Assembly (NCBI RefSeq): GCF_000150275.1
Contig: NW_002060976.1
Coordinates: 378,854-442,853, forward strand
Direction: 5' to 3'
Length of the DNA: 64,000 nt
Source of the DNA: Trichoplax adhaerens
Taxonomy: Eukaryota > Animalia > Placozoa
Under the pieces are notes generated by a model that was not told the DNA's origin, did not search any database, and saw only the letters and a program-made list of their open reading frames with translations. The translations under genes were made by a program, and so were the position numbers. Shown here piece after piece: positions 34,671 through 64,000 of the stretch (positions are counted from its first letter, which is position 1; each line of letters opens with the position of its first letter).

Positions 34671-34799
34671 TATTTGCTTTTCAAGCTTGGCTTGGGTTAT
34701 CGAGTGCTTGTTGTACAAGGCTAAATTAAAGAGGCAACATCCTACGAGGACTTGGTGGACTACTGCATCAAGAGGAAAAAGTGCTTTACAACGGTTACA

Positions 34800-42000: not shown

Positions 42001-42811
42001 CAATAGCCGAGAACATCCCTTTGCTCAACTCTATCGACAGTCTAATGGCAAGTCTGCACCTTTATTTAGTGCTCTACTAGTCTCGTATCGGTTGCAATGC
42101 TCTACAAGAGGCAAACAGTGTCAATGATCGTACGTTCTTCAGCATCGCTGCACTCATTATAGTAACAAGACATGACAAACGATTAGAAAATTACATGGAA
42201 TAGCCGAGAACATCTCTTTGCTCAACTCTATCGACAGTCTAATGGCAAGTCTGCACCTTTATTTAGTGCTCTACTAGTCTCGTATCGGTTGCAATGCTCT
42301 ACAAGAGGCAAATAGTGTCAATGATCGTACGTTCTTCAGCATCGCTGCACTCATTATAGTAACAAGACATGACAAACGATTAGAAAATTACATGGAATAG
42401 CCGAGAACATCTCTTTGCTTAACTCTATTGACAGTCTAATGCCAAGTCTGCACCTTTATTTAGTGCTCTACTAGTCTCCTAGGAGTCCTATCGGTTTCAT
42501 TGCTCTACAAGAGGCAAATAGTGTCAATGATCGTACGTTCTTCAGCATCGCTGCACTCATTATAGTAACAAGACATGACAAACGATTTGAATATTGCATA
42601 TCATTTGTCATATGGATTAGATGCTATCCTGAATTCCTAATGATCGATTTATGACTTGAATCATTCAATCAATCACTGTATTATTGTAACCACCTGCATA
42701 TCCAACCAGGTCGACTTTCAATCCAGCCTTGGCTAACGATATGCTATGATACTGCATACGAGGGCTCCTACCAATATCGCCAAGTACAAGAACACAAATG
42801 TTCCTATCCAT
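39075..42811 (-). CDS. ALG1: Chitobiosyldiphosphodolichol beta-1,4-mannosyltransferase (GT33), ~431 aa, 15 coding exons
   Basis: Exons (minus strand) 42811-42694, 41924-41847, 41639-41533, 41403-41255, 41155-41066, 40897-40831, 40717-40668, 40556-40459, 40374-40336, 40187-40119, 40031-39921, 39702-39641, 39544-39492, 39349-39274, 39203-39075; total 1296 nt in frame. Hallmark motifs [65 protein letters not shown]. Confidence 0.95.
42002..42590. repeat. 197-bp near-perfect tandem repeat, 3 copies, in ALG1 first coding intron
   Basis: aatagccgagaacatc.ctttgct.aactctat... at 42002, 42199 and 42396; the third copy has a ~10-bp insertion. Confidence 0.95.
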
Positions 42812-43337
42812 CTCTCTTTCTTCTACAAGCAGATGTATGAATTGCGGGATATTCTATGGCCTCTAGCTTTTAATGCAGAATTGGCAACCAAGTATAAAAG
42901 TAGTTTAGCAACCAGCAGCAGCAACTGTCCAAGCTAAAGGAAATCCTTCGACTACCAGGCTCTACTTTTGTAGTCCATGGTAACCCATACCATCCCTAGC
43001 ATGACTGCTGGAACTCCATACTGTATCTGTTCAGAAGAACACTGTTTGCAACAGTATTCTCGATGATTGAGGGTAGCCATACTGTTAGCTATCCTCTATC
43101 GGCACTGTATTGGACAGTAAAATTTTCTACTCATGTAGATTGAGAATTTGTTGCCATTCCGTTGGCTAAAACTTGATTCTATCCAGTATTTCTTCTACTG
43201 TAGTGAGCTACAAATACTTTCTGCCAGTCTTGGCTAACCTTGTCTTGATGGAAAGGATAGAATGCGGTGAAATTGGCCTGAAAACCGGACTGAATGATCA
43301 ACTACACCAGTTGCAATAGATGCCAATACCATGTCAA

Positions 43338-43800
43338 TACTGCAATTTTCCAAGCTATGGCCGTGTTGGTTATCAAGTTGGATCAATCTTTTAACCATAG
43401 AGGTATTTTTCATTTACTGTAATTTTCCAAGCTATGGCCATGTTGGTTATCAAGTTGGATCAATCTTTTAACCATAGAGGTATTTTTCATTTACTGTAAT
43501 TTTCCAAGCTATGGCCATGTTGGTTATCAAGTCGGATCTATGTTGTTGATCCATGTTGGTTGTCAAGTTGGATCAATCTTTTACCCATAGAGGTATTTTT
43601 CATTTACTGTAATTTTCCAAGCTATGGCCATGTTGGTTATCAAGTTGGATCAATCTTTTAACCATAGAGGTATTTTTCATTTACTGTAATTTTCCAAGCT
43701 ATGGCCATGTTGGTTATCAAGTTGGATCTATGTTGTTGATCCATGTTGGTTATCAAGTCGGATCTATGTTATTGATCCATGTTGATTATCAAGTTGGATA
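43338..43800. repeat. Compound minisatellite: 77-bp units interleaved with 36-bp sub-units
   Basis: tactgtaattttccaagctatggccatgttggttatcaagttggatcaatcttttaaccatagaggtatttttcatt (period 77: 43415, 43492) and ccatgttggttatcaagt.ggatctatgttgttgat (period 36: 43515, 43551) share a core. Confidence 0.92.
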
Positions 43801-47517: not shown

Positions 47518-50500
47518 TCATATGCTTCTCTTCCATCCGGCTATTTTTTCTTCCAGTTGGTCCACTATAGAAATCTTTTTCATCTTACGTAAAGCTGCAA
47601 CCACAACATAAATATCAGCATTTTGCCCGGCATTATTTTCCCACAATTTTAGAACTTTGTACACTTTATCGTAGCGGCTCTGTTCTCTTAATTTAATTTC
47701 GTCAATTTCTGTCTCTGACAAATGCAACAAGATTCCCAAACGTAATAAATCGTCTATATGGAGTTTCTCTGCTATTATATCGAAGAACCCTGTATCCATT
47801 TCTATATTAAAAATAAAATGGAGAACATGAACTATTGTTCAAGTCGCCAAGGTTGTATCTGATCTAGAATGCATGATTAGCAATGATATAGCAAATGCTT
47901 TTTCATAATAACTGTAATTTTAAAACTGATGATATTTTATAAAATGCAACCTGCTGTTAATACTACGATTTAGGATTTTTAATTGTCGCTTTAGGTTTGA
48001 TTCAATTTTATTACTATGAACTCTTCTAAAAGCTTACTGGATAAACAATCTGAACAAATTTTAAATCGGAAAATTAACTCATAAAATGATTATCTACTAT
48101 TCGGATGTTTCACTGGTGGTTAGCTAATCTTATAAAGCTTACTAGACAAACAATGTAGAAAAAAATTAAGATTGAATATTTTTTAATTTATAAATCATTA
48201 TTTATTGTGTCAAGTAGCTTACTAGTAGCTAGAATATTCTAATTACGATCTTAAAAATTCGTTGGCGATATCATTATCTAGTAAAACTGGATGCGATCAT
48301 ATCATCAGTGGCAAACGTAGCTGAAAGTATTACATCAATTGACGAGGTAAAGTATTCCTATGTTAGAATTTATACGGAGTAATGGCTCTTAATCATATTT
48401 GAATCAATCTAAAATTGAATTACTAAATGCAATTGAGAATGATTGATAGATATCAATTCAATAGAGGTTTACCTTCATCTTTGGTATCTTTCCATCGGTC
48501 TAAAGTAGTGGAATAAAAATAGCAATAATCGATTAATAGTTCTATCGTTCAAGTAATCAGTACAGTAAATTAGTGCCCATAATTCTTGATAATAATCAAC
48601 TATTGTTTACGCTATTACAAAATCACCTTATATTAAATAGTAAAATAGCTATGATAGAGTACATTTATGCCTCTTTGCTTGCTCTAGCGTATGACTATAG
48701 TTTATTATATCATGAAAAGTGATAATATAAGAATGAAGCTGCTGTTTATTCTTACATGCTTACCTATCCAGAAATTTTCATTATAAATCATCCAATCGTT
48801 CAAAGATCGACTCTCAAAGTACATATTACAATGCTTACATTGAATGCAATTTTGATCTCCTTCCTTGTATTCTTCGGTTATACTTGTTTGTGTATTACAT
48901 TCACTACATTTGACGAAATATCGACAATCAGCCCCTTTAAACTTGACCATCCTTTCATTGACAGTGGAGATGAGTTTATTCTTGACAATTTCGTGTGGCC
49001 GTTTGACAAATATAGAATTTTTAACTTTATCCTTAATCAATTGACTTGTCTTGGGCTCATTTATTTTCTGATAGCAATATTGTAAACCGATGTGAGATTC
49101 CTCTTTCTTGACTACAAGGTAATGATCGTCATTTTCTAAATAATATCTGGAACATTGATAGCATAATTTTACGTCCTTATTATTCCATTCCTTTAAACAA
49201 GAAGATAATAAGCAATAATAAATTCCATCTGGAAGATATGGAATATCTGTACGCTCGTATCCGATGTAGAGCCAATCTGATTGATGACATTTTGGTAAAT
49301 CAAATGGCTTAACATCATCTCGTAACAAGTATGGAACAAAGTATTGACATTCTTCTCCGTTGTCGTTCTTCTCATTTGTAATTGAACATAGAATATCATA
49401 AGCATCCATGAGTGCCAATATAGTTTGCTTACTATCGTCGTCTAAATTAAATTTATAAATAGCATGATCAATGTAGGATCTTGATAATTTTCCTGTTGTG
49501 CTGGCTTTCTCATAGTCGCGTTGTATCTGTGCACCTCCTTGTACAAAATCTTGTAATTGAATAATGGAACGAAATATATTTAATAACCAATCGACATTAG
49601 TTATAATAATTCCGTCGTCGCCTACTTTATCACAGTAGATGACTTCTCCTAAATCGTGTAGATACATTAGCATAGCGATTAATTCATCATGGTTTTCATA
49701 TAATCCGTATTGTTGAGACAAGGTTACTATTTGTTGCATTGTCATAATATTATGGACTTGAGAATGTCTAATTTCATTGATAATTGAAGATGCGGATTGA
49801 TTGTTACTGTTAGTAGGGAGCGATTTATTTAATATTGTAGCCATGATATACCATCGAATAGGTATAGGATTCGTAATAAATGGCAGCGATTGTACAAATG
49901 CCTTAATGATACCATGTAAACGAAGACAACATTGTCGACGCTGCTGCAGTGTCGACGGAGTACTATCAAGAGGATTGCAATCAAAAATAATACCAGAAGA
50001 ATAGATATGACTGGCATAAGAAGGCATGCGAGACGTCAATGTAGACACAAATTGATTGAATCGAGTACGTCCATCTTCTTCATTGGTAATATAATCGCCA
50101 TGAGAAGCTACTAAAATAATAATAGGTAATGAATGCTGTGAAGGTGGTAAATGCTGTCCATCTTCACTTTGAATGTTGACATTGATGGTACTTTGGCTTG
50201 TATGGCCAGCTATGATTGATGTAAGCCATTCTTGCATAGCTTGTAAATACGTCGTTTTGAGTGATTGGTTGTTCCTTGTTGTTACCTTGTCGTTAATGTC
50301 TTGATTAATATTAAATACTAAAATATAAATACTATTGACGGAGATAAAGGGATAATGAGTAACATGATAGACGGCATGACCTGCGAAATCCCATATTTTA
50401 ACATACTGATTTTTATCGTCTTTGTCTGTATTTTGATCGACGATCGACGAACAGTAATATTGATGTAAGCCTCGTTTAGACTGTGATTGAATTGGAATCT

Positions 50501-52273
50501 CTTTCCTTGCTATCGCTCCATCTTGCGTAATGACATCAGTTGCAGAAGAATCGACACTGTGTTGTTGCCCATTTGACACAGGTGGATTATTGGTTATAAC
50601 GGGTTGATGTATTGGATCCATGTCGGTTACTGGCTGACTGAGGTTATGTTGACGATCGATACTTGTTTGGGCTAAGTCTTGTATGACTGTCTTGACTTTA
50701 TCGTCTAGTATTTCAGTCCAATCACAACCCTCTAAGTTCATAACATTATAATATGCAGTCTCTACCGTAATATCCAAATTCTCAGCCACTTGTGTCGGAG
50801 ATGGATTGTTGAGTCGTTGGTTGGTAAATATTTTTCGAACAGAAGTTTTCCCCACATTGCGAGCGCCAATGAACATGCCTCGTATTAAATGATTAAAGCA
50901 ATGACCATGTTTTAAGCTTTTGCGATATGCATTGTAATATTTCTTTTCTTGCAAAGCTGTAGAACAACAAAATACAGAATAGGGTTACGGTTATCCATCG
51001 CTCTCTTGTCTACTACTGTATTACAACTCCACTTACCTTTCTCTTGTACGTCTTGATTGTTGTGACTGCCGTCGATAGTATTTGCTGGCGCTGTGACGTT
51101 GTTGGTTTGATTCGGTTGAAATAGTTCAACGATACTTTTGATCCAATTTCTCGCTATTGATGTCGACGATTTCTGCTTCTGGAGAGTGATTTCGATATTC
51201 TTTCCTATCCTTGTAACTAGGCCATCATTTCCGCTTGAGGCTGCGATCTGGAGTGACTTGTTAAAGTTATCCACAGCCTGATCGTACTTGCCTTGGTGAT
51301 GATAGACAAGTCCTATGTTGTGATATAAGTTGGCAACATGGGGATGATTGTGACCAAGGACTGACAATCCAATTTGCAGTGACTTGTTATACATATCCAC
51401 AGCCTGATCGTACTTGCCTTGGTGATGATAGACAACTCCTATGTTGTTATATGAACTGGCAACATGGGGATGATTGTGACCAAGGACTGACAATCGAATT
51501 TGCAGTGACTTGTCAAACATATCCACAGCCTGATCTGACTTGCCTTGGTGATCATAGACAACTCCTATGTTGTGATATGACCACGCAACATGGGGATGAT
51601 TGTGACCAAGGACTGACAATCGAATTTGCAGTGACTTGTTATGCATCTCCATAGCCTGATCTGACTTGCCTTGGTGATCATAGACAACTCCTATGCTGTT
51701 ATATGACCGCGCAACATCAGGATGATTGTGACCAAGGACTGACAATCGAATTTGCAGTGACTTGTCAAACATATCCATAGCCTGATCGTACTTGCACAAG
51801 TCCCAGTAGACGCACCCAATTTGATGATAACTATCGGCAAGACGAGCATCCTTTTCGTCTAACCATTTTAATTTCATTTCCAACGATTTCTTACCGTCTT
51901 CCAATGCTCCGTTGAAATCTTCTTGGCATCTCTTAATCTCGCTTTCTCTTTGTAAACATTGAGCCATGCTCACTTCATCTTGCAGTTTAGTAGCCACAGT
52001 TTGTCCCTTTTCACTCCATTCAACAGCTTCCTTGAATTGATATTGTAAAGTGTAAATGTCACAAAGACCAAGATAAATATCGCATGCAAGTCGATCAATA
52101 TCCGCACTAGGATTCGACAGCGAAGCAATCGCATCGACAGCTTGTGTATAACAAGATAGTCCGTCCACCAAGTGGAAGGCAGTCTTGCATGAGTTGCCCT
52201 TGTCGTACAGTGATTGTATACGGGTATGGTGAGGAAGCCCACTCGTGGAAGAGACAGATTCATCATCAGCCAT
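47518..52273 (-). CDS. ROCO protein copy 1: TPR repeats - Roc GTPase - COR - Death domain, ~1246 aa, 4 coding exons
   Basis: Exons 52273-51037, 50956-48764, 48499-48473 (27 nt) and 47801-47518. All three introns are GT-AG and phase 1, total 3741 nt in frame. Roc motifs GARNVGKTS, WDFAGH, YILVFN, LVASHGD; COR motifs IPIRW, YLHDLGEVIY, YFVPYLL; Death domain (LLRLGILLHLSETEIDEI...VLKLW...VVAALRKMKKISIVDQL). A 5'UTR intron is likely at 52280-52859. Confidence 0.9.
48473..48499 (-). CDS. 27-nt phase-1/phase-1 linker microexon of ROCO copy 1 (DRWKDTKDE)
   Basis: TTTATTCCACTACTTTAG|ACCGATGGAAAGATACCAAAGATGAAG|GTAAAC; homologous to the 27-nt exon in copy 3. Confidence 0.8.
51260..51845 (-). repeat. 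126-bp (42-aa) TPR tandem repeats in ROCO copy 1
   Basis: The anchor ggactgacaatc occurs at 51358, 51484, 51610 and 51736 (exact 126-bp period). Confidence 0.95.
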
Positions 52274-53270
52274 CTTTTCCTGCACTCAATTCAATAGTAT
52301 GTGAGTTAAAGACTTGAACGACAGGTTAGAGACAAATAAGATTCAAATCAAGCTTCGTTGCAACCATTAATGACTAATCATCGGATCGATATTATCTCCA
52401 TGTATTAATGAGATTATGTCGAAATGGTTGTACTTGCGTGTTAGTCGTAGTTCAACAGAACAACATCAATTATTCCATTATAGACAATTTTCAAGCATCA
52501 ATAAATCAACTTCTACAATGTCGTCTATTAATTCCGCATGGAAGATTATCCGAAAATCAATCTCTGTAGATAATTACTGAAGGCAACGCTATCGAACAAT
52601 CGTGTGCTTACGTGTACATTAACAAAATGCATTCCAGCTTACAAATAGATTATACTCATAATCATAATAACCATCAAATAACAATCTTTTTATTCTAATA
52701 GACAACAGCAAATAAATGCTAGCTACATCAATGATAGTGTAAAATAAGAGAGGATGCTTGCAATATAGTTTCGTTGGCGTCGTTTACCTATCTTTAATTT
52801 CTATTTTTACTTGAAATACAATGTATAATGATGGATACCTAACGAAATAGGTTACTTACCAATGGATGTTTTAAAAATCGGCTAATAACAACTTGATGAT
52901 TTTGCTGTAACGTAGATTTAATCCTACCAATCCGACTGCGCGCTGCTTTTTGCAACAGGGGCTAATGGATAAAAAGAGAAGGACAGGTGACATAAAACTC
53001 TACTCGGCTAAACAGCTCTATCCAACTACATATACGCTAAATACACGCACTGATCAGCACATCTAAATACTACAGTGTATCAGCGATTACAGACTACTAA
53101 CTCATTGGTTATTTCCTAACTATAAAAACTCCTTGCAAAGTCCTGCACGAGGAAGGGCTCTATTGATAACCATGAAGCTTGCTTGCTAGAAATCCCAGTT
53201 AAACCTGCGGCTATGACACGCTTTTATTCGTAAGTAGTCCCTATGTGGATGATGCGATAGCCGACGGATA

Positions 53271-53333
53271 AAGGTAAATAAATAAAATGAAGGTAAGGTA
53301 AATAAATAAAATGAAGGTAAGGTAAATAAATAA
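53271..53333. repeat. 24-bp tandem repeat (aaggtaaataaataaaatgaaggt), 2.6 copies
   Basis: Units start at 53271, 53295 and 53319 (partial). Confidence 0.85.
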
Positions 53334-56300
53334 ATTAGGTTTCTTTGCAATGATTTGTGCATAGTCATAAGACCTTATGAAATTAGAACAGCTCTAATTT
53401 GTATTAGTTTATTAAATACGAGTTTAAGATTAACCTACGAGTATCTTCCCTACCGAATTTCTTATATCTTGTTAGCTTAGTAAGCCGTCAATCATGTTAT
53501 TTGCAAAAGTTTGATGCCAATGAACTATTGCATGGGTAGATACAAGTTACCAACAAAATATCGTTCTCTCTAAATAAGGATAGTTGACATATTATCCTTA
53601 TCCATTTTCTTCTATTACAGTCTATCAATAAAACTATCATTTTATCAACAATTTAATTGCAGTCTACCATACGCTATTTATTGTCGTGGCTCCGCAGTCT
53701 GTGTTCATTGCAATTCAATTTGATAATGAGCTTGTTACTGCCATATAAAACTCTCAAATTATCAACTATGAAATTCATCAAGTAATAACTTAAAGGGGCG
53801 ACTGTTCAGGATAGGTTACTGATAGTAAACTGCGAGAAAGAATAGCGATGAATATTATATAACATAGAGACATAGAGAAATGATAGCAGTCTATTTCAAT
53901 ATACATCATTGACATTATCCGATCCATTGAATCTACTGTAGCTCAACAAAGAATACCATAAATTTAATAAAAGATATTGCTTGTAACAAATATTATCATT
54001 TTGTATACAACGTTCGTAGTCCGATGATGAATTAATGATAAACATTTGCATGGTCAAATTGTAAGCCATACTAATAAAGATTGTACAATCGCAATCATGA
54101 ATTTTTTAGACTAACCAGATACATCAACAACGGATTACAACATTGGATATGCAATAAAACGGATTAATCACTTGACTGATCAGCAGTAGCATATTCTACT
54201 TTAATTGGCAACAGGCATCCAATACAGGCATTGCAGTACAACAAGGCACCATCCTCTCAGCACTTACGCTCGCTGCATTCTCGCGCCAAAGAAGCTTCTT
54301 AGTCAACAAGTTCAGCTTCAATCCATGCTCACAGAACTCATTCTCAAGGATAGGTAATCATTTCTACGAGCATAACTCAACAGTTTTCAACAAACAAGAA
54401 GTATTTTATGATCGGAATAGAGTAAAGTAAGATCAAATTAAAATCTTCTGACAGAATTGGCGTGAGTACTGTTTGGCCTGATTGCAAATTGCATGCTATC
54501 GATACAAGATGTAACCCTTCATACATACTGGAAGTACTGCAATCCATAGCAATTCCATATGATTACTACCTTAATTTTATTCAATAATTAACAATCAATA
54601 AATTGTTAATATACACCATTTAAAGAAAATTTTTAGTATACTTTTATAAACTGTTTGACAAATGACAGTAAAAAATCAACGGAATACAGTAGCGCATGAT
54701 GAAGATGATATCAAGCGATTCAGCAAGATGGCTTAGTTATTGGACTCATCATCGATGATGATCGCCAATAAAACAGTGGCCAACAGTAATTTCTGCCATC
54801 GGAAGAACAATCTTCATATTAATTCAAGGAGGCTAAAAGATGCAACATTAAAAGAAACGAATCATCTACGCTTATTTCTCGTATGCACTAATTTACGCTA
54901 CTTTAACATTGATGCCCAAGGCACGCTAATGTTGGCTTCAGACAATAGAGCTAAAATGGACATGGTTGGTACTTTCATCAACTACATGGAGGAGAATTAC
55001 CAAGTCTATGCTATACGTGCATGCTCACAAATTATTCCTAGTCAAAATAATATACCAATCTCAGCTCTAAAAATGCTGCACAGTGCAAAATGGAACAGAG
55101 AATTTGGACAGTCTCCACGCTGTACTACGTTATTTTAAGTAAACTTACTTCTTAAAGCTTCCTAAACTGTTTCTACATGAAGTTGATACCAATGCAATAA
55201 GTTCAAAACCAATATTGAGCGGTTAACTGGTAACATCAGGGTAATTTGCTCAACTCTGGTTAAAACAGGTCATGACATTTTACAGGTGCACTAGCTGTAC
55301 TACCATCTTATACCAAGTACTAACTCGTCTAAAATAATCAAGACAGGAGCATTCTCGTGGAAGCTGATATGCTATCGAAACTGCGATTTGATGCAGTACA
55401 CTAATGTATTCTAGCTTATAAACTGTCCGTTTACTGTACAAGACTAATCAATTTCTCCATGAGGAGTACTAGAGTAGCTTCTCAAACTTGGGTAATAGCA
55501 ACAAAGGTTGTACCCGCTCCATGAGCAGTGGCGCTCGACGATTACAGGAAAGGTACCGATGGTGCAATTTTAAACGAACCATAGACGGATTCTACTTGAT
55601 TTTATTCATTTGATCTTCCATTGACTCCAATTATTCAAGAGTCTTTTACTCGTTTTAGCTCATACTGTCTTGATGAAATGTCGTACAAATTGGCAGGACA
55701 AGCCTGGAGCGAGATGGAAAGATCAAATACAGTAAAGCAATTTCGTCTTAATTTCGTACTTCGTAGCAATCATGACTAGAAGCTATTCACACTCGATAAC
55801 TGGCAATTAACTAGCTCTTCTTACAATTCATTATAGCAAACGATTTCTTTTTTCTCAGAATCTTTATAACTTTCATAAAGTAGGTTAATTTTACCGTCTG
55901 AAACAACGTCACTTTGCATAAAATAGTACAGCATTAACAAGTTTAACTCACGATTAGTACAAGCAAAAATGAATAGAAACCGTAATTAACAAACGCTTTA
56001 GAATACTTTACAATTATAAATGTTTTATCTTTCACCAGCAATTTATAAGTGCTCCATAAGTATTTAAAGTAAATTTATGATGCTTATCATATTGTCATTT
56101 CGTTGTGTACAGGAATAAAATGTTAAAAACTTAATTTTTACATCAGCAGACTCTTACACAAAACGTGATTGTGATGGCGAAGCTAAAAGATTGAAATCAA
56201 TCACATTGAGCATTGCTAATATTGTCCATTAAATTGTTGGTTTATTTCAACCAAGGCAAAATAAAACATTATTTTCTTATAATGCTATTTATTTTGATCA

Positions 56301-57510
56301 TGAAAAAAAGCAAATAAGCACAAATAGACCATCAATAAATTAGAAGCAAGATATGTATGACGTAAGTATGTAAGTATGACGTTGTTTTAGTTACTTGCCA
56401 ACCGGATAGAAAAGGTTATTTTTATCATTTTACACCATCCAGTATTTATATTTTCTAGCTTGACTACTCGAGCATTTGATAAAGAGTTTACTACATTTTT
56501 AATCTCAATAGAGTACAGTATTGAGTTATAAGAGCTCAATTAAGCAATTATAGGCTCAGAAATTAAGTCTCTTGATTTATGATAATTGCTTATGATTTTA
56601 TTTATTTAAGTAATTTTATTATGTTGCTATTGATGACAATACAGTATGACAGAATACGAGAAGTATTTTTTTCAGTAGAAAAAGTAAGTCATGGATATTG
56701 CAACCAAACTTAGCTAACTAATGCTATTGGTAATAAACAATGAAATTTTTATATTGCTTTTATCAAAGTTAGGAGTAGCAGTAGCATAATTAATACGTGT
56801 GTTACAATTCAGAATAGTTAATATCACTAGAAGTAAAATAGAGTAGATAAGATTTTATAAATTTACGGTACGTTTATACTTCAAAATGAGCGATCTTGTA
56901 GGCACAACTTAACGCTATCAATAACAACATAAATATCTTCCAACTACCCTATTGAAAAATCAAAAATCATATTTCAATGTAATAAAGATAAATTAATCAC
57001 AAAAATTCTAAGCTTGATCAGTTAATTCAATACGTACTGCTTAATGTCAAATTTAATTCAGTATTTATATACATGTTAAATGTTATTTATATACATGTTA
57101 AATGTTCGATCTTTAAATGAGCTCTATTTTTAAGTGCACGCAAATACAGGAGCTGTAAAGTTGGGATTACTTTGATCGATGCAACAGATTCTATCAATTG
57201 ACTAGCGATAGAGCAATTTTAGCTATCACAGGCCCTTTACAGCTAAAGTTTCGGAAAAAGCTGTACTTTCTAAATTACGAAAAAGCTATATTATTAATTA
57301 CCGGTACTCGTTCTGTGCGTAATAAGCTGAAATACCAACTATTGATTTAGTTGAGTACAGTATAACAAAACTGTAAATTGAAAATCTAATTTCATTATAT
57401 AGTTGATGTACTATTCTCTACTCTGATCGTTTTATTGTTATTTCTACTCGAAAGTGGGATAATCATGTATCACATCGTTAAGTTTTAATCGTTAGGTCTA
57501 TTCGTAAACT

Positions 57511-57950
57511 TTAATGCTTACCACTATGGACGTTTTCCACTGTTATTTTCCAATATGTTAAAGCATTGCAAAACTCATCAAAGGCTCTATCGTCACGCTC
57601 AGGCAGAATATCCAATAAAGTCCAAACTTTTCTGTAAAACAGAATTAAATAATTACGATAACTGCTCTCCGACTACAAAATTTATTCTTGCAGTAAATAA
57701 ACAAACTATTAATTTAGCCTGCCATTGCATATTAGATAGAATACTGTTTAACAGTTACTGAACATGTACTATATAAAAATTCCTTACTCAAAAGCCGTCA
57801 ATTTAGATTCGATTGTTTGTTTGTGGAATGATGTTAATATACTCGCTCCAAGTAAATATTCACATATCGGTGAGATTTGATCCTGACATTTTTCAGCAAG
57901 TAACATTCGATTGGCTGTTAGGATTTCACGATGTTCTTGAGTCATTGATC
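57511..57950 (-). CDS. CARD domain, two exons (57950-57788, 57631-57511), not in ORF track
   Basis: Spliced translation GSMTQEHREILTANRMLLAEKCQDQISPICEYLLGASILTSFHKQTIESKLTAFE|KVWTLLDILPERDDRAFDEFCNALTYW matches the CARD consensus (H..L..NR..L; YL....ILT; LLDILP.RG..AF..F..AL). Phase-1 acceptor CCTCAG; phase-2 intron GTAAGG...TTTACAG. Confidence 0.87.
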
Positions 57951-59431
57951 CTGAGGACGTTTTGGGTAATTGAGGTAATTGGGTTTTTAGTAATTGCTCT
58001 TAATCATATTTGAATCAATCTAAAATTGAATTACTAAATGCAATTGAGAATGATTGATAGATATCAATTCAATAGAGGTTACCTTTATCTTGNNNNNNNN
58101 NNNNNNNNNNNNNNNNNNNNNNNNNNNNNNNNNNNNNNNNNNGCGAGGGCCAATAAACATGCCTCGTATTAAACGATTAAAGCAATGGCCATGTTTTAAT
58201 GCTTTGCTATATGCATTGTAATATTTCTTTTCTTGCAAAGCTGTAGAACAACAAAATGCAGAATAGGGTTACGGTTATCCATCGCTCTCTCGTCTACTAC
58301 TGTATTAAAACTCTACTTACGTTTCTCTTGTACGTGTTGGTTGTTATGGCTGCCGTCGATCGTATTTGCTGGCGCTATATCGTTGTTGGTTTGATTCAGT
58401 TGAAACCGTTCAAGGATACTTTTGATCCAATTTCTCGCTATTGATGTCGGCGATTTCTGCTGCCGGAGAACGATTTCGATATTCTTTTTGGTCATTGTAA
58501 CTAGGCCATCATTTCCGCTTAAGGTTGCGATATACAGTGACTTCTTAAAGTTATCCAGAGCCTGATCGATCTTGCCTTGGTGACTATAGACAACTCCTAT
58601 GTTGTTATATGAGTTGGCAACATCAGGGTGATTGTGACCAAGGACTGACAATCGAATTTGCAGTGACTTGTCATGCATATCCATAGCCTGATCGATCTTG
58701 GCTTGGTCAAGATAGACACATCCTATGCTGTGATATGACCACGCAACATCAGGATGATTGTGACCAAGGACTGACAATCGAATTTGCAGTGACTTGTTAT
58801 ACATCTCCACAGCCTGATCGTACTTGCCTTGGTCATGATAGACAACTCCTATGTTGTGATATGACTGCGCAACATCGGGATGATTGTGACCAAGGACTGA
58901 CAATCGAATTTGCAGTGACTTGTCATGCATCTCCATAGCCTGATCGTACTGGCACAAGTTCCAGTAGACGCGCCCAATTTGATGATAACTATCGGCAAGA
59001 CGAGTATCCTTTTCGTCTAACCATTTTAATTTCATTTTCAACGATTTCTTACCGTCTTGCAGTGCTCCGTTGTAATCCCCCTGGCGTCTCTTAATCTCGC
59101 TTTTTCTTAGTAAACATTGAGCCATGCGCACTTTATCTTGCAGTTTAGTAGCCACAGTTTGTCCCTTTTCACTCCAATCAACAGCTTCCTTGAATTGATA
59201 TTGTAAAGTGTAAATGTCACAAAGACCAAGATAAATATCGCATGCAAGTCGATCAATATCCGCACTAGGATTCGACAACGAAGCAATCGCATCGACAGCT
59301 TGTGTATAACAAGATAGTCCGTCCACCAACTGGAAGGCAGCCTTGTACGAGTTGCCCTTTTCGTACAGTGATTGTATACGGGTATGGTGAGGAAGCCCAC
59401 TCGTGGAAGAGACAGATTCATCATCAGCCAT
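57511..59431 (-). CDS. ROCO protein copy 2: TPR - [Roc-COR mostly inside assembly gap] - CARD
   Basis: TPR exon 59431-58321; 80-bp phase-1 intron 58320-58241; Roc start (LIRGMFIGPR) running into the N-gap. After the gap comes the 3' end of the linker microexon (CAAGATAAAG|GTAACC, ending 58083), then CARD exons 57950-57788 and 57631-57511. The exact C-terminus is uncertain (alternative phase-1 donor at 57521). Confidence 0.75.
58093..58142. other. Assembly gap (50 N) hiding most of the Roc-COR exon of copy 2
   Basis: The flanks align to copy 1 at ~50859 and ~48483, implying about 2.4 kb of missing sequence. Confidence 0.9.
58545..59000 (-). repeat. 126-bp TPR tandem repeats in ROCO copy 2
   Basis: The anchor ggactgacaatc occurs at 58642, 58768 and 58894. 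The TPR exon is 1111 nt versus 1237 nt in copy 1, exactly 126 nt shorter. Confidence 0.95.
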
Positions 59432-59565
59432 CTTTTCCTGCACTCAATTCAATAGTATGTTAGTTAAAGACTTGAACGACAGGTTAGAGACAAATAAGAT
59501 TGAAATCAAGCTTCGTTGCAACCATTCATGACTAATCATCGGATCGATATTATCTCTCTGCATTA

Positions 59566-60083
59566 ATGAGGTCATGTCGGAATGGTTGTACTTGCGTGCT
59601 AGTCGTAGTTCAACACAACAACATCAATTATTCCATTATAGACAATTTTCAAGCATCAACAAATCAACTTCTACAATATCGTCTATCAATTTCGCATGGA
59701 AGATTATCCGAAAATCATTCAATCAATCTCTGTAGCTGATTACTGAAGACAACGCTATCGAACAATCGTGTGCTGGCATCAATCAATACCAAACTAAATC
59801 CAAGGAGTAGACTAATTTACGTGATGAGGTTATGTCGGAATGGTTGTATGTGCGTGCCAGTCGTAGTTTAAACACAACAACATCAATTATTCCATTATAG
59901 ACAATTTTCAAGCATCAATAAATCAACTTTTACAATGTCGCTATCCATTCCGCATGGAAGATTATCCGAAAATTATTCAATCAATCTCTGTGGGTGATTA
60001 CTGAAGATAACGCTATCGAACAATCGTGTGCTGGCATCAAAATCAATACCAAACTAAATCCAAGGAGTAGACTAATTTACGTG
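59566..60083. repeat. ~258-bp tandem duplication in the 5'UTR intron of ROCO copy 2
   Basis: atgaggt.atgtcggaatggttgta... at 59566 and 59824; single copy in copy 1 (~52408). Confidence 0.88.
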
Positions 60084-61795
60084 TACATTAACAAAATTCT
60101 CTCCAGCTTACAAATACATTATACTCATAATCATAATGACCATCAAACAACGATCGTTTTACTCTAATAGATAATGGCAAAATGCATGCTAGCCACATCA
60201 ATGATAGTGCAAAATAAGAAAGGATGCTTATAATATAGTTTCGTTGGCGTCGTTTACCTATCTTTCATTTCTATTTTTACTTGAAATACAATGTATAAGG
60301 ATGGATACCCAAACGGAATAGGTCACTTACCAATAGATGTTTTAAAAATCGGCTAATAACAACTTGATGATTTTGCTGTGACGTCGATTTAATTCTATCA
60401 ATCCGACTGCGCGCTGCTTATTGCAAATAGGAGCAAGTGGATAAAAAGAGAATCGACAGGTGACATAAAACTCTACTCGGCTAAACAGCTCTATCCCACT
60501 GCATATACACTAAATACACGCTTTGATTACAGCGATTACAGACTACTAACTCATTGGTTATTTCGTACCTATAAGTAGTCCTTGCAAAGTCCTGCATGAG
60601 GAAGGGCACTATTGATAACCATGAAGCTTGCTTGGCTAGAAATCCCAGTTGAACCTGCGGCCATGCCGCGCTTTTACTCTTTAGTCTCATGTGGATGATG
60701 TAATAGCCGACGGATAAAGGTTGCTATAGTAACTGCGCCATTAAGTTAGGGTTTTATTAATTAACTTATGCTTTGCTAGGTCTTCTATATTATATTGCTG
60801 TACCGCGTACAGGTAGTCCTTTCTTTAGTATATAGTTTATATCGCTATATTATGATCTTATGGTGACGCCTAAATTAAACTACTTAATTCAATCTATTGA
60901 CGAAAAATTGAATGTATACTCAAAGCTCTCGAGGCTGACCATTGACTGAACTACTGACCTTTAAATTTCTACATTATCCATGATGGACACTTGTTGATTA
61001 CTTAAGTATGTGGGCTCTCTCTGCATAAGGTAGATGCACCGTAAGTGTCCACCAAAATGGGTAATAGCCTTAAATATCCTTTAATTGTAACTCTGAATTA
61101 TTAATATATACGTTAAAATACCTATACAGAACAGAAAAAAGATACTAAAGTTCATATACAATCATCTTAGCAGGATTCTATAAAATGCCTTTAGAAGGTG
61201 TATTTGCATAAACCTTGTTATGAGCTGCGGTTCTCGTTTGCAAAAATTAATTTAAGGACATATTTCTACTATCGTATTTTTGTTGATAAGAAATATTCTT
61301 CATTCTGTTCTATTCAGTCTTGGTAACCCTAAAATCCTAATCAAAAACTAAATATCCGTGCCAATCAATTATTGTAATACCGCTACTTTATGTAGCATAT
61401 GAATATAATGCACTTTATTCCTATACGATTTTTTAGTGGGTTACTTCTCATTCTACCTTCGACTCGAATCATGTCCCAAACCGTAAAGTGAGACAACTAA
61501 ATATTGGTAAAGGGCTACAATTAGAGGTAAATTTATGTTATTTTTAAATAAAATTAGGTTTCTTTGCAATGACTTATACATAGTCATAAGACCTTATGAA
61601 ATTAAAACAGCTCTAATTTGTATTAGTTTATTAAACACGAGTTTAAGATTAACCTACGAGTATCTTCCCTACCGAATTTCTATGTCTTGTTAGCTTAGTA
61701 AGCCGTCAATCATGCTTATAATGTTGTCATTTCGTTGTGGACAGGAATAAAATGTTAAAAACTTAATAATTTTCACATCAGCAGATTCTACACAA

Positions 61796-61845
61796 NNNNN
61801 NNNNNNNNNNNNNNNNNNNNNNNNNNNNNNNNNNNNNNNNNNNNN
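61796..61845. other. Assembly gap (50 N)
   Basis: N run; the flanks match paralogous sequence around 56160 and 56250, so about 90 bp is probably missing. Confidence 0.9.
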
Positions 61846-61975
61846 ATCAAGGCAAAACAAAACATTATTTTCTTATAACGCTAATTATTTTGATCTTAAA
61901 AAAATGCAAATGAGCACAAATAGACCATCAATAAATTAGTATCTACACTATAGTAAACAAAAGAAGATTAGTCCT

Positions 61976-64000
61976 CTAGGAATTTTGTTCGTTTGGGATA
62001 ATAATATCATTTCTGTCAATCGTTTCCAAAGCGTTCCGCAATAGATTAAGAGTAGCATTTGGGTATTTCCTTCTGTACCACTGATTAAGCGATTGGATGG
62101 CACTGTTATAGGCATGACCACGATGTTTTGCTTCGATAACCTCAGTATCAATTGTTGGATCTAGGACTGTAGCTAATTTTGTCCAGTCTACACCAACACA
62201 ACTAGCGATCAAGTGAAAATAGTTTCTAGGATCTATAAGGCACGAATGAATATATTACCACATACGTCATCTTAAAATTACAAATTGAAATTATCTTATC
62301 ATGGACTAGCCGAACCCGCATACTCAGCTGTGTGCTATCAATGTGACTCAATAATTTAAGGAAGTACCACATGATTTAAATGTGGATACATTTGTATTAA
62401 TTTAACCTAATTCATTTTACTTATTGTTGGATACTCGCAAGTAAAGTAGTGGAGTAGTAGCTTATATGTTCTAATTATAATCTGAAATATTCGTTGCTAT
62501 TCTAATTAGCTAGCAGAGCTTTGTGAGATAATATCACACATAATAATTACTTCTAGTTACTATTATAATTAAATGGGCAAATTAATTACTATAATTATGA
62601 ATAGAAAACGATTTCATTGACACTTACCGTCATCTCTCACATCTATCCATCGCTCTAAAGGAATGAAATAAAGAAGAGGAATAATAAATTGGCAGTTCTA
62701 TGGTAGTTGAATTGAAGCAAATAGTAAAAGTTATGCACAGTAAAATGAAAAGTACACCTAGAAACGGTTTACAAAGAATGCTCTCTTCCTCTTTCTCTAT
62801 TTATGTGCTCTATAACCTCTATATATGCGTGTCCTATAAAGCTATGGAACTGATTAGCTACGATGTAAAATTAAGAACATTCTCGTACTTCTGATGGTTA
62901 TGAATACTTTTGATGTTACAAAGCAATTGCGGAAAAAATTCAACGAGTTCTATATTGCCAAATAAACAGACTATAATAGATGAACTGGCTATACCGAAAG
63001 ATTGCTATCTATTTATTATTAATAAGAAATATATGTAAATTATAATTAGTAAATACTACCACTTCATCAACTATTGTAGATTGTACAATAATTATTGCAA
63101 CTTGAGAACTAAATTAAGATGGAGATCATTGCCACTCTACTTAATCTCGGATGTGATTTAGCTCGATTGCATTAGTATTTTGCTACAGATTAAGCAAAGG
63201 TGATGTTGTAATAATCTTATTGTAGTGTGTGGAAACGTTTTAACCATCGAACACTTGATATTACGAATAACTTAGGCTAGCGCTCTTGTCAGATACATGA
63301 CGGTAAAAAAAGACGTGGCAATAACAAAGCTACTGGCTGATTTTATATCCTTACCTATCGATAACTCTTTATTATAAATCATCCAATCGTGGAGAGATTG
63401 ACTAGCAAATTGCTGAGTACAATACTCGCATCGAATCCAATTGCTGTCTTCTTCTCTATATTCTTCGGTTATACTTATTTCTTCATTACACTCGTTACAT
63501 TTAACGTAAAATCGGCAACGAGCCCCTTGAAAATTTATCATCCTTTTATCCACAATGGAGATAAGCTTATTCTTGACAATATCGTGCGGCCGCTTGTTAA
63601 ATATAGAATTCTTAACTTTGTCGATCACCAATTTACCAATGTCCAGCTGATTGATTTTCTGATAGCAATATTGTAAACCAATGTAAGGTCCTTCTTTCTT
63701 AATTATCAGGTAATGATCATCATTTGCTAAATAATATTTAGCGCATCGATAATATAATTCTACAACCTTATTATTCCATTGTATTAAACAAGATGATAGC
63801 AGGCTGTGAAAAATTCCATATGGAATATCTCCTTTCTCGTATCCGATGTAAAGCCAATCTGAGGCATGATATTTACGCAAATCAAAGGGCTTAACATTAC
63901 GTGGTAACAAGTATGGAACAAAATATTGCCACTCTTCTGTAGTATCATCCAGTTCATTTCTAATACAAAATAGGATATCATAAGATTCCATGAGTGCAAT
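61976..64000 (-). CDS. ROCO protein copy 3 (3' part): COR C-terminus - linker microexon - Death domain
   Basis: COR exon from beyond 64000 to 63355 (donor ATAG|GTAAGG, phase 1); 27-nt microexon 62654-62628 (ERWIDVRDD); terminal exon 62232-61976 DPRNYFHLIASCVGVDWTKLATVL...SLNQWYRRKYPNATLNLLRNALETIDRNDII (Death domain consensus). Confidence 0.85.

What the first reader, a model, noticed from the sequence alone, without database searches (positions are those of the whole stretch)
47518..64000. Tandem TPR-Roc-COR receptor array with exchangeable death-fold effectors (Death / CARD / different Death): an NLR-analogous system
Seen in sequence: three head-to-tail paralogs share homologous parts (TPR and Roc start in copies 1 and 2, COR end in copies 1 and 3, the linker microexon in all three), yet end in three dissimilar death-fold modules: Death (47801-47518), CARD (57950-57511) and a second Death (62232-61976). 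The ORF track breaks these into unlinked pieces and misses the CARD. Established knowledge: NLR/STAND receptors combine sensor repeats, a nucleotide switch and a death-fold effector; Roc-COR is a dimerising GTPase switch; Death and CARD domains recruit adaptors and caspases homotypically. Inference: these are intracellular surveillance receptors in reversed order (N-terminal sensor, C-terminal effector) that use a GTPase instead of NACHT/NB-ARC, and each paralog is wired to a different downstream partner. I recall that ROCO expansions with TPR and death-fold domains have been noted in placozoan genomes, so the domain inventory may be known. The side-by-side effector swap is the part I have not seen described.
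Basis: partly seen in the sequence, partly recalled or inferred. Interest (0 to 1): 0.92.

Follow-up and report, generated by a model that had tools for sequence, protein, structure and literature searches.

The report
Tandem placozoan ROCO genes, swapped death-fold tails
Three neighbouring Trichoplax genes encode TPR–Roc–COR GTPases that end in a Death, a CARD and a second kind of Death domain; the family was already published, and what is new is clear evidence that the tail exons and the gene body have separate histories.

Summary
The genome matches Trichoplax adhaerens in size and contig number. Window 47518-64000 (minus strand) carries three transcribed ROCO paralogs. Each has a TPR exon, a Roc-COR exon, a 27-nt phase 1-1 microexon and a death-fold exon.

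- **Tails:** FADD-like Death-A (copy 1), RAIDD-like CARD (copy 2), ankyrin-like Death-B (copy 3).
- **Splicing:** RNA contigs show the COR-microexon-Death splices of copy 3 and the intron inside the CARD. They also show the CARD exon preceded by the linker microexon. A public Trichoplax sp. H2 model of 1246 aa joins all four exons of copy 1.
- **Gaps:** gap 58093-58142 is not continuous and hides about 2.4 kb of copy 2. Gap 61796-61845 lies outside coding sequence.
- **Paralog:** on scaffold C1372, COR tail, microexon and CARD lie in one gap-free, in-frame stretch.
- **Swapping:** COR tails 98-99% identical carry different tails. Breakpoints lie in the introns beside the microexon, and AU tests reject tails tracking COR.

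The NLR-like function remains inference, and the idea is not new: Civiero 2014 lists Trichoplax ROCOs with CARD, Death and TPR, and Kaur 2021 describes bacterial Roc-COR conflict systems. The scan also noted a TPR-COR-CARD gene on another piece of this genome (s1-735024). Verdict: new member of a known kind, moderate interest.

The parts
51037..52273 (-). Copy 1, exon with start codon and TPR array (4.3 units of 126 nt)
   Evidence: Pfam TPR_12 5e-77; H2 model P0001 aa 1-413; tandem repeat 51252-51795
48764..50956 (-). Copy 1, Roc-COR exon (P-loop GARNVGKT, DFAG, SHGD; COR-A; COR-B by fold)
   Evidence: Pfam Roc and COR-A above cut-off; motifs; family profile hits C. tepidum Roco and LRRK2 at 1e-23 to 1e-21; model pTM 0.80 matches LRRK1, C. 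tepidum Roco and LRRK2 over about 740 columns
48473..48499 (-). Copy 1, 27-nt linker microexon, phase 1-1
   Evidence: AG/GT flanks in the sequence; accounts for P0001 aa 1146-1153
47518..47801 (-). Copy 1, Death-A exon with stop (FADD-like)
   Evidence: Pfam Death 5.6e-12; FADD death domain is the best solved relative, 6e-5; 99% identical to the tail of P0001
58321..59431 (-). Copy 2, TPR coding exon (3.1 units; one unit fewer than copy 1)
   Evidence: intron 58241-58320 appears as a joint in one contig each of X13, X6 and X12, letters between the sides given as 'not known'
60330..60527 (-). Copy 2, 5' untranslated exon
   Evidence: RNA joints 59436/60330 (X13, X6) and 59598/60331 (X6); contig lying on 60330-60527
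58143..58240 (-). Copy 2, first 32-33 codons of Roc, cut by the assembly gap
   Evidence: 87.5% identical to copy 1 and 100% to the C1404 paralog
58093..58142 (.). Assembly gap that hides the rest of Roc-COR, one intron and 17 nt of the microexon of copy 2 (about 2.4 kb)
58083..58092 (-). Copy 2, last 10 nt of the linker microexon with GT donor
   Evidence: 9 of 10 nt equal the RNA overhang and L009
57788..57950 (-). Copy 2, CARD exon a (phase 1 acceptor, internal ATG at 57945)
   Evidence: RNA joint 57631/57788 and the overhang at 57952
57509..57631 (-). Copy 2, CARD exon b with stop (RAIDD-like CARD)
   Evidence: P0171 scores CARD 6.3e-12; RAIDD CARD 1e-7; contigs run unspliced through 57511
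63355..64000 (-). Copy 3, end of the COR exon (runs off the window)
   Evidence: 62% identical to copy 1 COR; RNA joint 62654/63355
62628..62654 (-). Copy 3, 27-nt linker microexon
   Evidence: RNA joints on both sides in X13, X6 and X12
61976..62232 (-). Copy 3, Death-B exon with stop (ankyrin-type death domain)
   Evidence: Pfam Death 2.7e-7, 31.1 bits; ankyrin death domain 2e-4; 60% identical to the tail of H2 protein P0003, a 1247-aa protein with TPR, Roc and Death hits on record that aligns over the whole Roc-COR exon
61796..61845 (.). Assembly gap downstream of copy 3, outside coding sequence
   Evidence: One contig of run X6 (RNA only guessed, may be DNA) lies on both sides, joint 61789/61854; letters between the sides not known

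Best explanation
**Shown.** The stretch is part of a tandem array of transcribed ROCO genes in a genome that matches Trichoplax adhaerens. The family has at least 46 COR loci genome-wide. Each gene encodes:
- an N-terminal array of near-identical 42-aa TPR units with a few hypervariable positions;
- a Roc GTPase with intact G1, G3 and G4 motifs, followed by COR-A and COR-B;
- a 9-residue linker from a 27-nt phase 1-1 microexon;
- one death-fold domain: FADD-like Death-A, ankyrin-like Death-B or RAIDD-like CARD.

The tail module and the TPR-Roc-COR body have separate histories. Recombination breakpoints lie in the two introns that flank the microexon, so bodies 98-99% identical carry different tails.

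**Inferred.**
- Copy 2 is a complete TPR-Roc-COR-CARD gene whose middle is lost in the assembly gap.
- The proteins work as GTP-switched, COR-dimerising scaffolds. A ligand or a disturbed cell state read by the TPR array changes the Roc-COR state and exposes or clusters the death-fold tail.
- The tail then recruits Death- or CARD-bearing adaptors and CARD-caspases by homotypic contact, leading to cell death or a related response.
- This makes them functional analogues of NLR or Apaf-1-type receptors, built on a GTPase and with the domain order reversed.
For: **Architecture**
- Domains and fold.
- One transcript per gene: RNA joints for copy 3 and for the intron inside the CARD; the H2 model P0001 of identical length for copy 1.

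**CARD belongs to a ROCO gene**
- An in-frame 27-nt microexon overhang lies on the CARD exon in three runs.
- L009 (scaffold C1372) carries COR tail, GT..AG intron, microexon, a 132-nt intron and the CARD exons without a gap and in frame.
- The same type of CARD ends the Roc-COR models TRIADDRAFT_62397 and P0046 (E 7e-16).

**Exchange of tails**
- COR tail of copy 1 against L009: 98% aa, Death-A versus CARD.
- L024 against L025: 99% over 404 aa, Death-B versus Death-A.
- L030 and L031 are sisters (support 99/99) with Death-A versus Death-B. Death-A and Death-B share only about 25% identity.
- DNA breakpoints: 132 nt after the COR exon; 95 nt after the microexon, which is 39 nt before the CARD acceptor; and 335 nt after the microexon.
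- The AU test rejects a single clade for Death-A bodies (p 1e-165) and for Death-B bodies (p 7e-5). The tree needs 6 label changes against a minimum of 2.

**Receptor-like traits**
- 22 of 46 COR loci have a Death exon and 3 have a CARD exon within 4 kb downstream.
- The TPR exon is 86% identical between the window's copy and its Trichoplax sp. H2 ortholog, against 96% for Roc-COR. The differences fall at recurrent positions in the repeat unit.
- Distant Roc-COR relatives in bivalves, echinoderms, corals and a hemichordate end in Death, DED, CARD, TIR, caspase or HEPN domains.
Against: - No contig or model spans COR to CARD in copy 2. The RNA overhang stops after 27 nt, and its two extra letters (AG) fit both the end of the COR exon and the end of the intron.
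- The H2 annotation calls the CARD a lone 92-aa gene, and it has its own ATG.
- Other copies of the CARD cassette (L012-L015) show no COR within several kb upstream.
- The join of the TPR side and the CARD side of copy 2 rests on scaffolding across a gap at which the H2 assembly also breaks.
- The mosaic could come from gene conversion of the body rather than movement of tails.
- Nothing here tests GTP binding, dimerisation, ligand sensing, partner recruitment or any immune role.
- The placozoan immunity survey PMC6321704 does not mention these genes.
- The tree uses only 10 of about 46 loci. The labels were set after the identity table had been seen.
Confidence: 0.6

Rival explanations
1. The CARD cassette at 57509-57950 is a separate small CARD-only gene, as annotated in Trichoplax sp. 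H2 ('CRADD', 92 aa). Copy 2 would then be a truncated or differently ending ROCO gene, or its two halves would be wrongly joined by the scaffold.
For: - The cassette has its own ATG at 57945.
- H2 calls it as a lone gene at the start of a contig.
- At least 7 paralogous cassettes exist, several with no COR upstream.
- Both assemblies break at 58091/58092.
- RNA contigs end 27 nt upstream of the exon.
Against: - Those 27 nt are the ROCO linker microexon, in frame and spliced at the phase-1 acceptor, in three runs.
- The window keeps the microexon tail, the GT donor and intron sequence 97% identical to copy 1 up to 39 nt before the CARD exon.
- L009 shows COR tail, microexon and CARD in one gap-free stretch.
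- Roc-COR-CARD gene models with this type of CARD exist.
Confidence: 0.12
2. No tails were moved, at least between Death-A and Death-B genes. Death-A, Death-B and CARD genes are old separate lineages that sit next to each other. Repeated gene conversion has homogenised only their TPR-Roc-COR bodies, and the conversion tracts end in the introns around the microexon.
For: - Death-A and Death-B both occur in distant clades (L030, L031) and are about as diverged as the bodies between clades.
- The most similar bodies are those of neighbours: L024 and L025 are 99% identical on one scaffold.
- dS of the TPR exon is 15 times that of Roc-COR between the window's copy and its H2 ortholog, as conversion would produce.
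- The breakpoints differ between pairs.
Against: - For the CARD, homology to other cassettes begins only 17-18 nt before the acceptor, and a roughly 20-nt junction segment separates it from copy-1-like intron. This looks like insertion of a cassette.
- In either case body and tail are recombined, so the resulting proteins are the same.
Confidence: 0.35
3. The genes are real, but they are not sensors of microbes. They could be DAPK1-like regulators of cell death, the cytoskeleton or trafficking, or a self/non-self (allorecognition) system. The death-fold tails would then serve as general assembly modules.
For: - DAPK1 pairs Roc-COR with a death domain without being a pathogen receptor.
- Civiero 2014 relates the Trichoplax ROCO expansion to chemotaxis and phagocytosis.
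- TPR-bearing NLRs are described as apparently not involved in recognising microbial patterns (PMC6321704).
Against: - Tandem expansion, hypervariable repeat positions and interchangeable death-fold tails are the usual marks of conflict-type receptors.
- Bacterial Roc-COR proteins with variable effectors are predicted defence systems.
- dN/dS of 3.5 in Roc-COR between the window's copy and its H2 ortholog is only marginal (28 non-synonymous to 2 synonymous changes, p about 0.04).
Confidence: 0.3

Closest known systems
Published Trichoplax adhaerens ROCO repertoire (Civiero et al. 2014, Chem Biol, PMC4104024)
   Same: Same organism and family. That paper lists at least 17 ROCO genes whose Roc-COR is flanked by CARD, Death, TPR, LRR, AAA and TIR domains.
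   Different: - That paper gives domain cartoons only.
- Here the count is at least 46 COR loci, with 25 having a death-fold exon downstream.
- New here: the exon plan with a phase 1-1 microexon, the tandem layout, and mosaic body/tail histories with mapped breakpoints.
- Copy 2 is not a complete model in the H2 assembly, where the CARD is called alone. The gene models of the window's own assembly were not examined.
DAPK1 (death-associated protein kinase 1)
   Same: Roc-COR followed by a C-terminal death domain in an animal cell-death protein.
   Different: The window genes have no kinase and no ankyrin repeats. They have an N-terminal TPR array instead. They form a multi-copy, fast-evolving family with alternative tails.
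Prokaryotic AP-GTPase (Roc)-COR conflict systems (Kaur et al. 2021, eLife, PMC8195603)
   Same: N-terminal fast-evolving repeats, a Roc-COR switch, and a C-terminal position filled by many alternative effector domains. That paper explicitly compares them with NLRs.
   Different: - Those systems are bacterial, with LRR rather than TPR repeats.
- Their effectors are mostly enzymes such as TIR or GT4.
- Here the tails are adaptor-type death-fold domains, exchanged by intron recombination in an animal.
NLR and Apaf-1-like STAND receptors, including placozoan NB-ARC-TPR/WD40 proteins with CARD or Death-like domains (Kamm et al. 2019, PMC6321704)
   Same: The same three-part logic of repeat sensor, nucleotide switch and death-fold effector. 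Both show lineage-specific expansion in clusters.
   Different: - The switch is a Ras-like GTPase with COR, not a NACHT or NB-ARC ATPase.
- The domain order is reversed.
- Roc-COR dimerises in solved relatives, whereas STAND proteins form rings. This last point rests on my own knowledge of published C. tepidum Roco and LRRK2 structures.
Brown-alga LRR-ROCO candidate immune receptors (Teng et al. 2024, PMC11378527)
   Same: An expanded ROCO family proposed as immune receptors and diversified by exon shuffling.
   Different: In brown algae the shuffled exons are single LRR sensor units and no death-fold tail is present. Here the TPR array is one exon and the shuffled unit is the effector.

Membership tests
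ROCO (Roc-COR tandem GTPases) | Roc: a Ras-like G domain with G1, G3 and G4 motifs | tested here: met
   Pfam Roc 40.2 bits against a cut-off of 27. GARNVGKT, WDFAGH and SHGD are present. Switch II aligns to LRRK2 and M. barkeri Roco. A disordered insert of about 60 aa lies between G1 and G3.
ROCO (Roc-COR tandem GTPases) | COR-A directly after Roc | tested here: met
   PF16095 42.3 bits against a cut-off of 35.3. The family profile hits C. tepidum Roco COR at 9.5e-24.
ROCO (Roc-COR tandem GTPases) | COR-B completing the tandem | tested here: met
   Pfam COR-B was not detected. The model (pTM 0.80) aligns over 740-780 columns to Roc-COR of LRRK1, C. tepidum Roco and LRRK2, with Foldseek E down to 1e-15.
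ROCO (Roc-COR tandem GTPases) | GTP binding and hydrolysis, and COR-mediated dimerisation | not testable with these tools
   This needs biochemistry.
Death-fold superfamily (Death, CARD) | Death domain above the Pfam gathering score | tested here: met
   46.1 bits (copy 1) and 31.1 bits (copy 3) against a cut-off of 22.6.
Death-fold superfamily (Death, CARD) | CARD above the Pfam gathering score | tested here: met
Exon a alone scores 15.5 bits, below the cut-off of 23.9. The spliced public H2 ortholog P0171 (98% identical) scores 45.8 bits, and the RAIDD CARD matches at 1e-7.
Death-fold superfamily (Death, CARD) | Homotypic binding to Death or CARD partners | not tested
   No complex prediction or experiment was done.
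NLR / STAND receptors | NACHT or NB-ARC STAND ATPase as the central switch | tested here: not met
   No STAND family matched any exon. The switch is Roc-COR. The genes are therefore not members, only analogous in layout.
DAPK1-type ROCO | Ser/Thr kinase plus ankyrin repeats upstream of Roc-COR-Death | tested here: not met
   No kinase or ankyrin hit. Only the Roc-COR-Death part is shared.
AP-GTPase conflict-system architecture (repeat sensor, Roc-COR, variable C-terminal effector) | Variable repeats at the N-terminus and alternative effectors at the C-terminus of closely related Roc-COR bodies | tested here: met
   A role in conflict or defence was not tested.

The most novel reading that the evidence does not exclude
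Neighbouring ROCO genes keep their TPR-Roc-COR bodies nearly identical by gene conversion because they pair through COR. Such heterodimers would bring two different death-fold tails together (Death-A with Death-B or CARD). They would act as a GTPase-based counterpart of paired NLRs, with the hypervariable TPR positions giving strain-specific recognition of microbes or of non-self placozoans.
Probability: 0.1. Interest if true: 0.75.

Novelty: new member of a known kind. Interest (0 to 1): 0.42.

Why it matters
ROCO proteins (LRRK2, DAPK1) matter medically, yet their signalling logic is poorly understood. How early animals sense trouble inside their cells is also an open question.

This array offers natural pairs of proteins with almost the same sensor and switch but different death-fold outputs. 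Such pairs suit tests of what a Roc-COR switch does to its output domain. They also suit a test of whether placozoans use a GTPase-based receptor class alongside their NB-ARC proteins.

The result also shows that public placozoan gene models systematically break these genes at assembly gaps. Repertoire counts and immunity surveys therefore miss them.

Tried and rejected
- **Closing gap 58093-58142 with the H2 assembly.** Contig NOWV01000207 begins exactly at window 58091. Contig NOWV01000293 ends inside the COR of P0002. P0002 is not the copy 2 ortholog, because its upstream region matches the copy-1-type upstream at 94%.
- **RNA overhang at 58143 as proof of copy 2's own Roc.** It is identical to copy 1 or to other paralogs, so it cannot be assigned.
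- **Searching the genome for the RNA microexon.** The exact copies lie before Death-B exons on C1098 and C1404. The microexon is therefore shared and does not mark copy 2.
- **Full census tree of all 46 COR loci.** The tree uses 10 loci, and L003 and L004 were left out as too short.
- **AU test for the two CARD bodies.** Not significant (p 0.32), because L021 is a long outgroup-like branch.
- **Rest of copy 3.** Six-frame searches found no Roc or COR-A hit on the scaffold beyond the window end. It is probably in another gap, but I did not read that stretch.
- **Copy 1 splice junctions.** They rest on the H2 model.
- **Joined spliced proteins of the window.** Exons were searched separately and public models served as proxies.
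- **Complex prediction.** None was run, since binding is not claimed as shown.


Full report
**Organism and setting.** The window is scaffold C1381:378854-442853 of a 105.6-Mb genome in 1414 contigs. The Roc-COR exon of copy 1 is 96% identical to a Trichoplax sp. H2 protein, and more distant hits are TRIADDRAFT models. I therefore take the genome to be Trichoplax adhaerens or something very close to it. The stretch is AT-rich (GC 0.29-0.40). All features of the finding lie on the minus strand.

**Check of the observation: paralogs and domains.** A tblastn of the large ORFs against the window shows three paralogs.
- TPR exon of copy 1 (52273-51037) against copy 2 (59431-58321): 76% aa, with one 42-aa unit fewer in copy 2.
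- The first 32 Roc residues of copy 2 (58238-58143) are 87.5% identical to copy 1 and end at the gap.
- The COR tail of copy 3 (64000-63299) is 62% identical to copy 1.

Pfam gives TPR_12 (5e-77), Roc (40.2 bits, cut-off 27), COR-A (42.3 bits, cut-off 35.3), Death for 47521-47799 (46.1 bits) and Death for 61979-62212 (31.1 bits, cut-off 22.6). CARD exon a alone is sub-threshold at 15.5 bits. Read by eye, the two exons continue each other across a GT..AG intron. The public 92-aa H2 protein P0171, 98% identical, scores CARD 45.8 bits, E 6.3e-12.

The nearest solved relatives differ for each tail: RAIDD CARD (1e-7), FADD death domain (6e-5) and ankyrin death domain (2e-4). The two Death exons share only about 24-28% identity.

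**The gaps, tested first.**
- Gap 58093-58142 is not a continuous join. Roc residue 33 lies on one side and the last 10 nt of the linker microexon with its GT donor on the other. By comparison with copy 1, about 2.4 kb is missing.
- The H2 assembly breaks at the same base. Contig NOWV01000207 aligns from its first base to window 58091-43338 at 98.1%. This is what one expects if the hidden part is nearly identical to other paralogs.
- Gap 61796-61845 lies 130 nt downstream of the stop of copy 3. One contig of run X6, a run only guessed to be RNA and possibly DNA, lies on both its sides (joint 61789/61854). Whether further letters lie between the two sides is not known. The gap does not touch coding sequence.

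**Are the pieces one gene each?**
The H2 model P0001 has 1246 aa and aligns exon by exon at 86%, 96% and 99%. Canonical splice sites are visible.
- *Copy 3.* Contigs of run X13 (a stranded-unknown but declared RNA-Seq run) and of X6 and X12 carry the joints 63355/62654 and 62628/62232. Both have CT..AC ends, which is GT..AG on the minus strand. COR, microexon and Death-B are therefore spliced together.
- *Copy 2.* The 156-nt intron inside the CARD appears as a joint in contigs of X13, X6 and X12. The 80-nt TPR/Roc intron appears in one contig each of X13 (58240/58321) and of X6 and X12 (58241/58322), each with the letters between the sides given as 'not known'. A 5' untranslated exon at 60330-60527 is joined to 59436 in X13 and X6, with the same remark.
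- *CARD to microexon.* In the same three runs, the contigs that cover CARD exon a continue past its acceptor into 19-27 nt that read as a linker microexon in gene sense. This extension is in frame (..DQRKDTKDK-G-SMTQEH..), and its last 9 nt equal window 58091-58083.
- *CARD end.* Contigs run unspliced through 57511, so the frame ends at the stop 57509-57511.
- *Caveat.* The contigs stop at the microexon because it is shared among paralogs. No single contig links COR to CARD.

**Independent support for COR-microexon-CARD.** The CARD cassette has at least 7 paralogs in the genome. One lies on scaffold C1372 (locus L009). In one gap-free stretch it carries, in order:
- a COR tail 98% aa and 98.95% DNA identical to copy 1;
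- the same donor (TGGATAG|GTAAGC);
- the microexon;
- a 132-nt intron;
- CARD exon a (98% aa) and CARD exon b (85% aa).

All of this is in frame. Upstream, L009 has a Death-B exon 95% identical to that of copy 3, followed by a gap. It therefore repeats the order seen in the window. The same CARD type ends the Roc-COR models TRIADDRAFT_62397 (P0164) and P0046, with E 7e-16. I put the probability that copy 2 encodes TPR-Roc-COR-CARD at about 0.85.

**Membership in the ROCO family.**
- The Roc part has GARNVGKT (G1), WDFAGH (G3) and SHGD (G4).
- A profile of 26 family members hits C. tepidum Roco (9.5e-24), M. barkeri Roco and LRRK2.
- An AlphaFold model (pLDDT 78, pTM 0.80) matches Roc-COR of LRRK1, C. 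tepidum Roco and LRRK2 over about 740 columns. COR-B is therefore present although Pfam missed it.
- Residues 101-159 of the exon form a disordered insert inside the G domain.
- No kinase, ankyrin, NACHT or NB-ARC domain was found. These genes are therefore neither DAPK1 orthologs nor NLRs.

**Exchange of tails.**
- Six-frame scans find 46 COR-A loci. Of these, 22 have a Death exon and 3 a CARD exon within 4 kb downstream on the same strand. These counts are lower bounds.
- Among the loci I could fetch, the tails fall into three classes. Death-A: copy 1, L005, L025, L030. Death-B: copy 3, L003, L004, L024, L020, L031. CARD: copy 2, L009, L021.
- Bodies do not follow tails. Copy 1 and L009 are 98% identical (Death-A versus CARD). 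L024 and L025, neighbours on C1375, are 99% identical over 404 aa (Death-B versus Death-A). L005 and L004 are 97% identical over 70 aa (Death-A versus Death-B).
- On a maximum-likelihood tree of COR tails, L030 (Death-A) and L031 (Death-B) are sisters with 99/99 support. The labels need 6 changes where 2 would suffice. AU tests reject a single clade for Death-A bodies (p 1e-165) and Death-B bodies (p 7e-5). The test for the two CARD bodies is uninformative (p 0.32) because of a long branch.
- At DNA level the switches are sharp and lie in introns. Copy 1 and L009 or copy 2 stay 97-99% identical until 95 nt after the microexon, 39 nt before the CARD acceptor. L024 and L025 part 132 nt after the COR exon. 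Copy 1 and L024 part 335 nt after the microexon.
- Other CARD cassettes share homology with the window only from 17-18 nt before the acceptor. This fits a cassette inserted into a copy-1-like intron.
- All three tail exons begin in phase 1 after a symmetric 1-1 microexon, so any swap keeps the reading frame.

Whether tails moved or bodies were homogenised by gene conversion is open. I favour insertion for the CARD and leave conversion as likely for the Death-A/Death-B pairs.

**Sensor-like behaviour of the TPR array.**
- Between the window's copy 1 and its H2 ortholog, the flanks and the Roc-COR exon are 98-99% identical in DNA. The TPR exon is 93% identical in DNA and 86% in aa.
- The differences recur at the same positions of the 42-aa unit. 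Entropy peaks at unit positions 1, 21, 31 and 32 in 25 units.
- dS in the repeats is 0.08, against 0.005 in Roc-COR. This points to unit shuffling or conversion rather than point mutation alone. dN/dS there is 1.2.
- In Roc-COR, 28 of 30 differences are non-synonymous (dN/dS 3.5). My own binomial estimate is p about 0.04, which is suggestive only.

**Comparison with what is known.**
- Civiero et al. 2014 (PMC4104024) reported at least 17 T. adhaerens ROCO genes with CARD, Death, TPR, LRR, AAA and TIR domains.
- Kaur et al. 2021 (PMC8195603) describe Roc ('AP-GTPase') as an NTP switch alongside STAND ATPases. They also describe bacterial LRR-Roc-COR proteins with at least 24 alternative C-terminal effectors as conflict systems.
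- Teng et al. 2024 (PMC11378527) propose brown-alga ROCOs as immune receptors diversified by exon shuffling of LRR units.
- An Aplysia survey shows TIR/ROC-COR proteins and a figure of TIR- and COR-containing proteins whose domain key includes Death (PMC9334734).
- In my own search, 18 of 92 distant Roc-COR relatives end in Death. Others end in TIR, caspase, DED, CARD, HEPN or GT4. Ten of the sixteen relatives that my own iterated Death profile picked out were looked up; seven of the ten carry a species name: three scallops, a freshwater mussel, a brittle star, a sea urchin, a coral and an acorn worm.
- The placozoan immunity survey of Kamm et al. 2019 (PMC6321704) does not mention Roc or GTPases.

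The kind of system and its NLR analogy are therefore published. What this window adds is a well-resolved example of body/tail mosaicism, its exon mechanics, and the point that both public assemblies break these genes.

**Mechanism.** Shown: the architecture, transcription, splicing for copies 1 and 3 and in part for copy 2, intact GTPase motifs, and modular exchange of tails. Inferred from established knowledge of Roc-COR (nucleotide-dependent dimer switch in C. tepidum Roco and LRRK2) and of death-fold domains (homotypic assembly): the TPR array reads a ligand or cell state, Roc-COR converts this into a change of oligomeric state, and the tail nucleates Death or CARD complexes. At least 118 Death and 39 CARD exon hits in this genome offer a large pool of possible partners. 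No step of this chain was tested here.

**Verdict.** This is a new member of a known kind, with a useful new evolutionary detail. Interest 0.42.

Noticed in passing
window 50478-50654 (minus strand; residues 101-159 of the Roc-COR exon): A low-complexity insert of about 60 residues lies inside the Roc G domain between the P-loop/switch I region and G3. Its predicted pLDDT is below 40. Pfam Roc matches only the part of the domain after it.
   Followed up: partly
window 48764-50954 against L001 7115-9304: Between the window's copy 1 and its Trichoplax sp. H2 ortholog, the Roc-COR exon differs at 30 sites, of which 28 are non-synonymous (dN/dS 3.5, my binomial p about 0.04). This could be positive selection or conversion from paralogs.
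   Followed up: partly
window 51252-51795 and 58552-58946: The TPR units are 126-nt tandem repeats, 4.3 copies in copy 1 and 3.1 in copy 2. The scaffold is nearly invariant, with hot spots at unit positions 1, 21, 31 and 32. This matches earlier scan note s1-734999.
   Followed up: partly
window 59566-60083: A 258-nt tandem duplication lies in the 5' intron and intergenic region of copy 2. Contigs of X13 and X6 carry only one copy (joint 59780/60041). This is copy-number variation, not splicing.
   Followed up: no
window 57963: One X12 contig joins the microexon sequence to 57963, about 11 nt upstream of the normal CARD acceptor, with no AG there. This would shift the frame. It could be a rare isoform, a paralog or a contig artefact.
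   Followed up: no
window 61524-63274: One X6 contig shows a plus-strand GT..AG joint that skips 1749 nt across the copy 3 tail. This may be an antisense transcript.
   Followed up: no
G000 C1398:6434-13380 and 24668-25324 and 90008-90443; C1246:7538-7969; C1392:47668-48103: At least 7 copies of the two-exon CARD cassette are 70-98% identical. Most show no COR within several kb upstream, and some lie next to Death exons. Their homology to the window starts 17-18 nt before the acceptor, so the cassette behaves as a mobile exon pair.
   Followed up: partly
G000 C1375:187475-209354 (L024, L025) and C1404:924000-971000 (L004, L005): Further tandem ROCO arrays alternate Death-B and Death-A tails on bodies 93-99% identical. 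C1404 and C1375 are 97.7% identical segmental copies.
   Followed up: partly
window about 38700-43400 (minus strand; H2 gene at L001 14587-19227): The gene next to the array is a GT4-type glycosyltransferase (Glyco_transf_4 and Glycos_transf_1). GT4 'conflict' domains also end 3 of 92 distant Roc-COR relatives. The adjacency may be coincidence.
   Followed up: no
window 42002-43764: Tandem repeats of 197 nt (3 copies) and of 77, 113 and 190 nt. L001 aligns to this stretch in many overlapping pieces, so the copy number may differ between the window and Trichoplax sp. H2; no copies were counted there.
   Followed up: no
window 277-21727 (minus strand): Four single-exon rhodopsin-type GPCR ORFs lie in tandem (7tm_1, E 1e-14 to 1e-32). 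Also present are a Laminin_G_3 ORF at 28669-29265 and a SAM plus PAP2_C gene at 34752-38102 on the plus strand.
   Followed up: partly
protein P0169 (TRIADDRAFT_61609), not in the window: A 1697-aa T. adhaerens protein in the same 90% cluster as the Roc-COR relative P0053 is named 'CHAT domain-containing' by UniProt. This points to a caspase-like protease as a further partner domain in the family.
   Followed up: no
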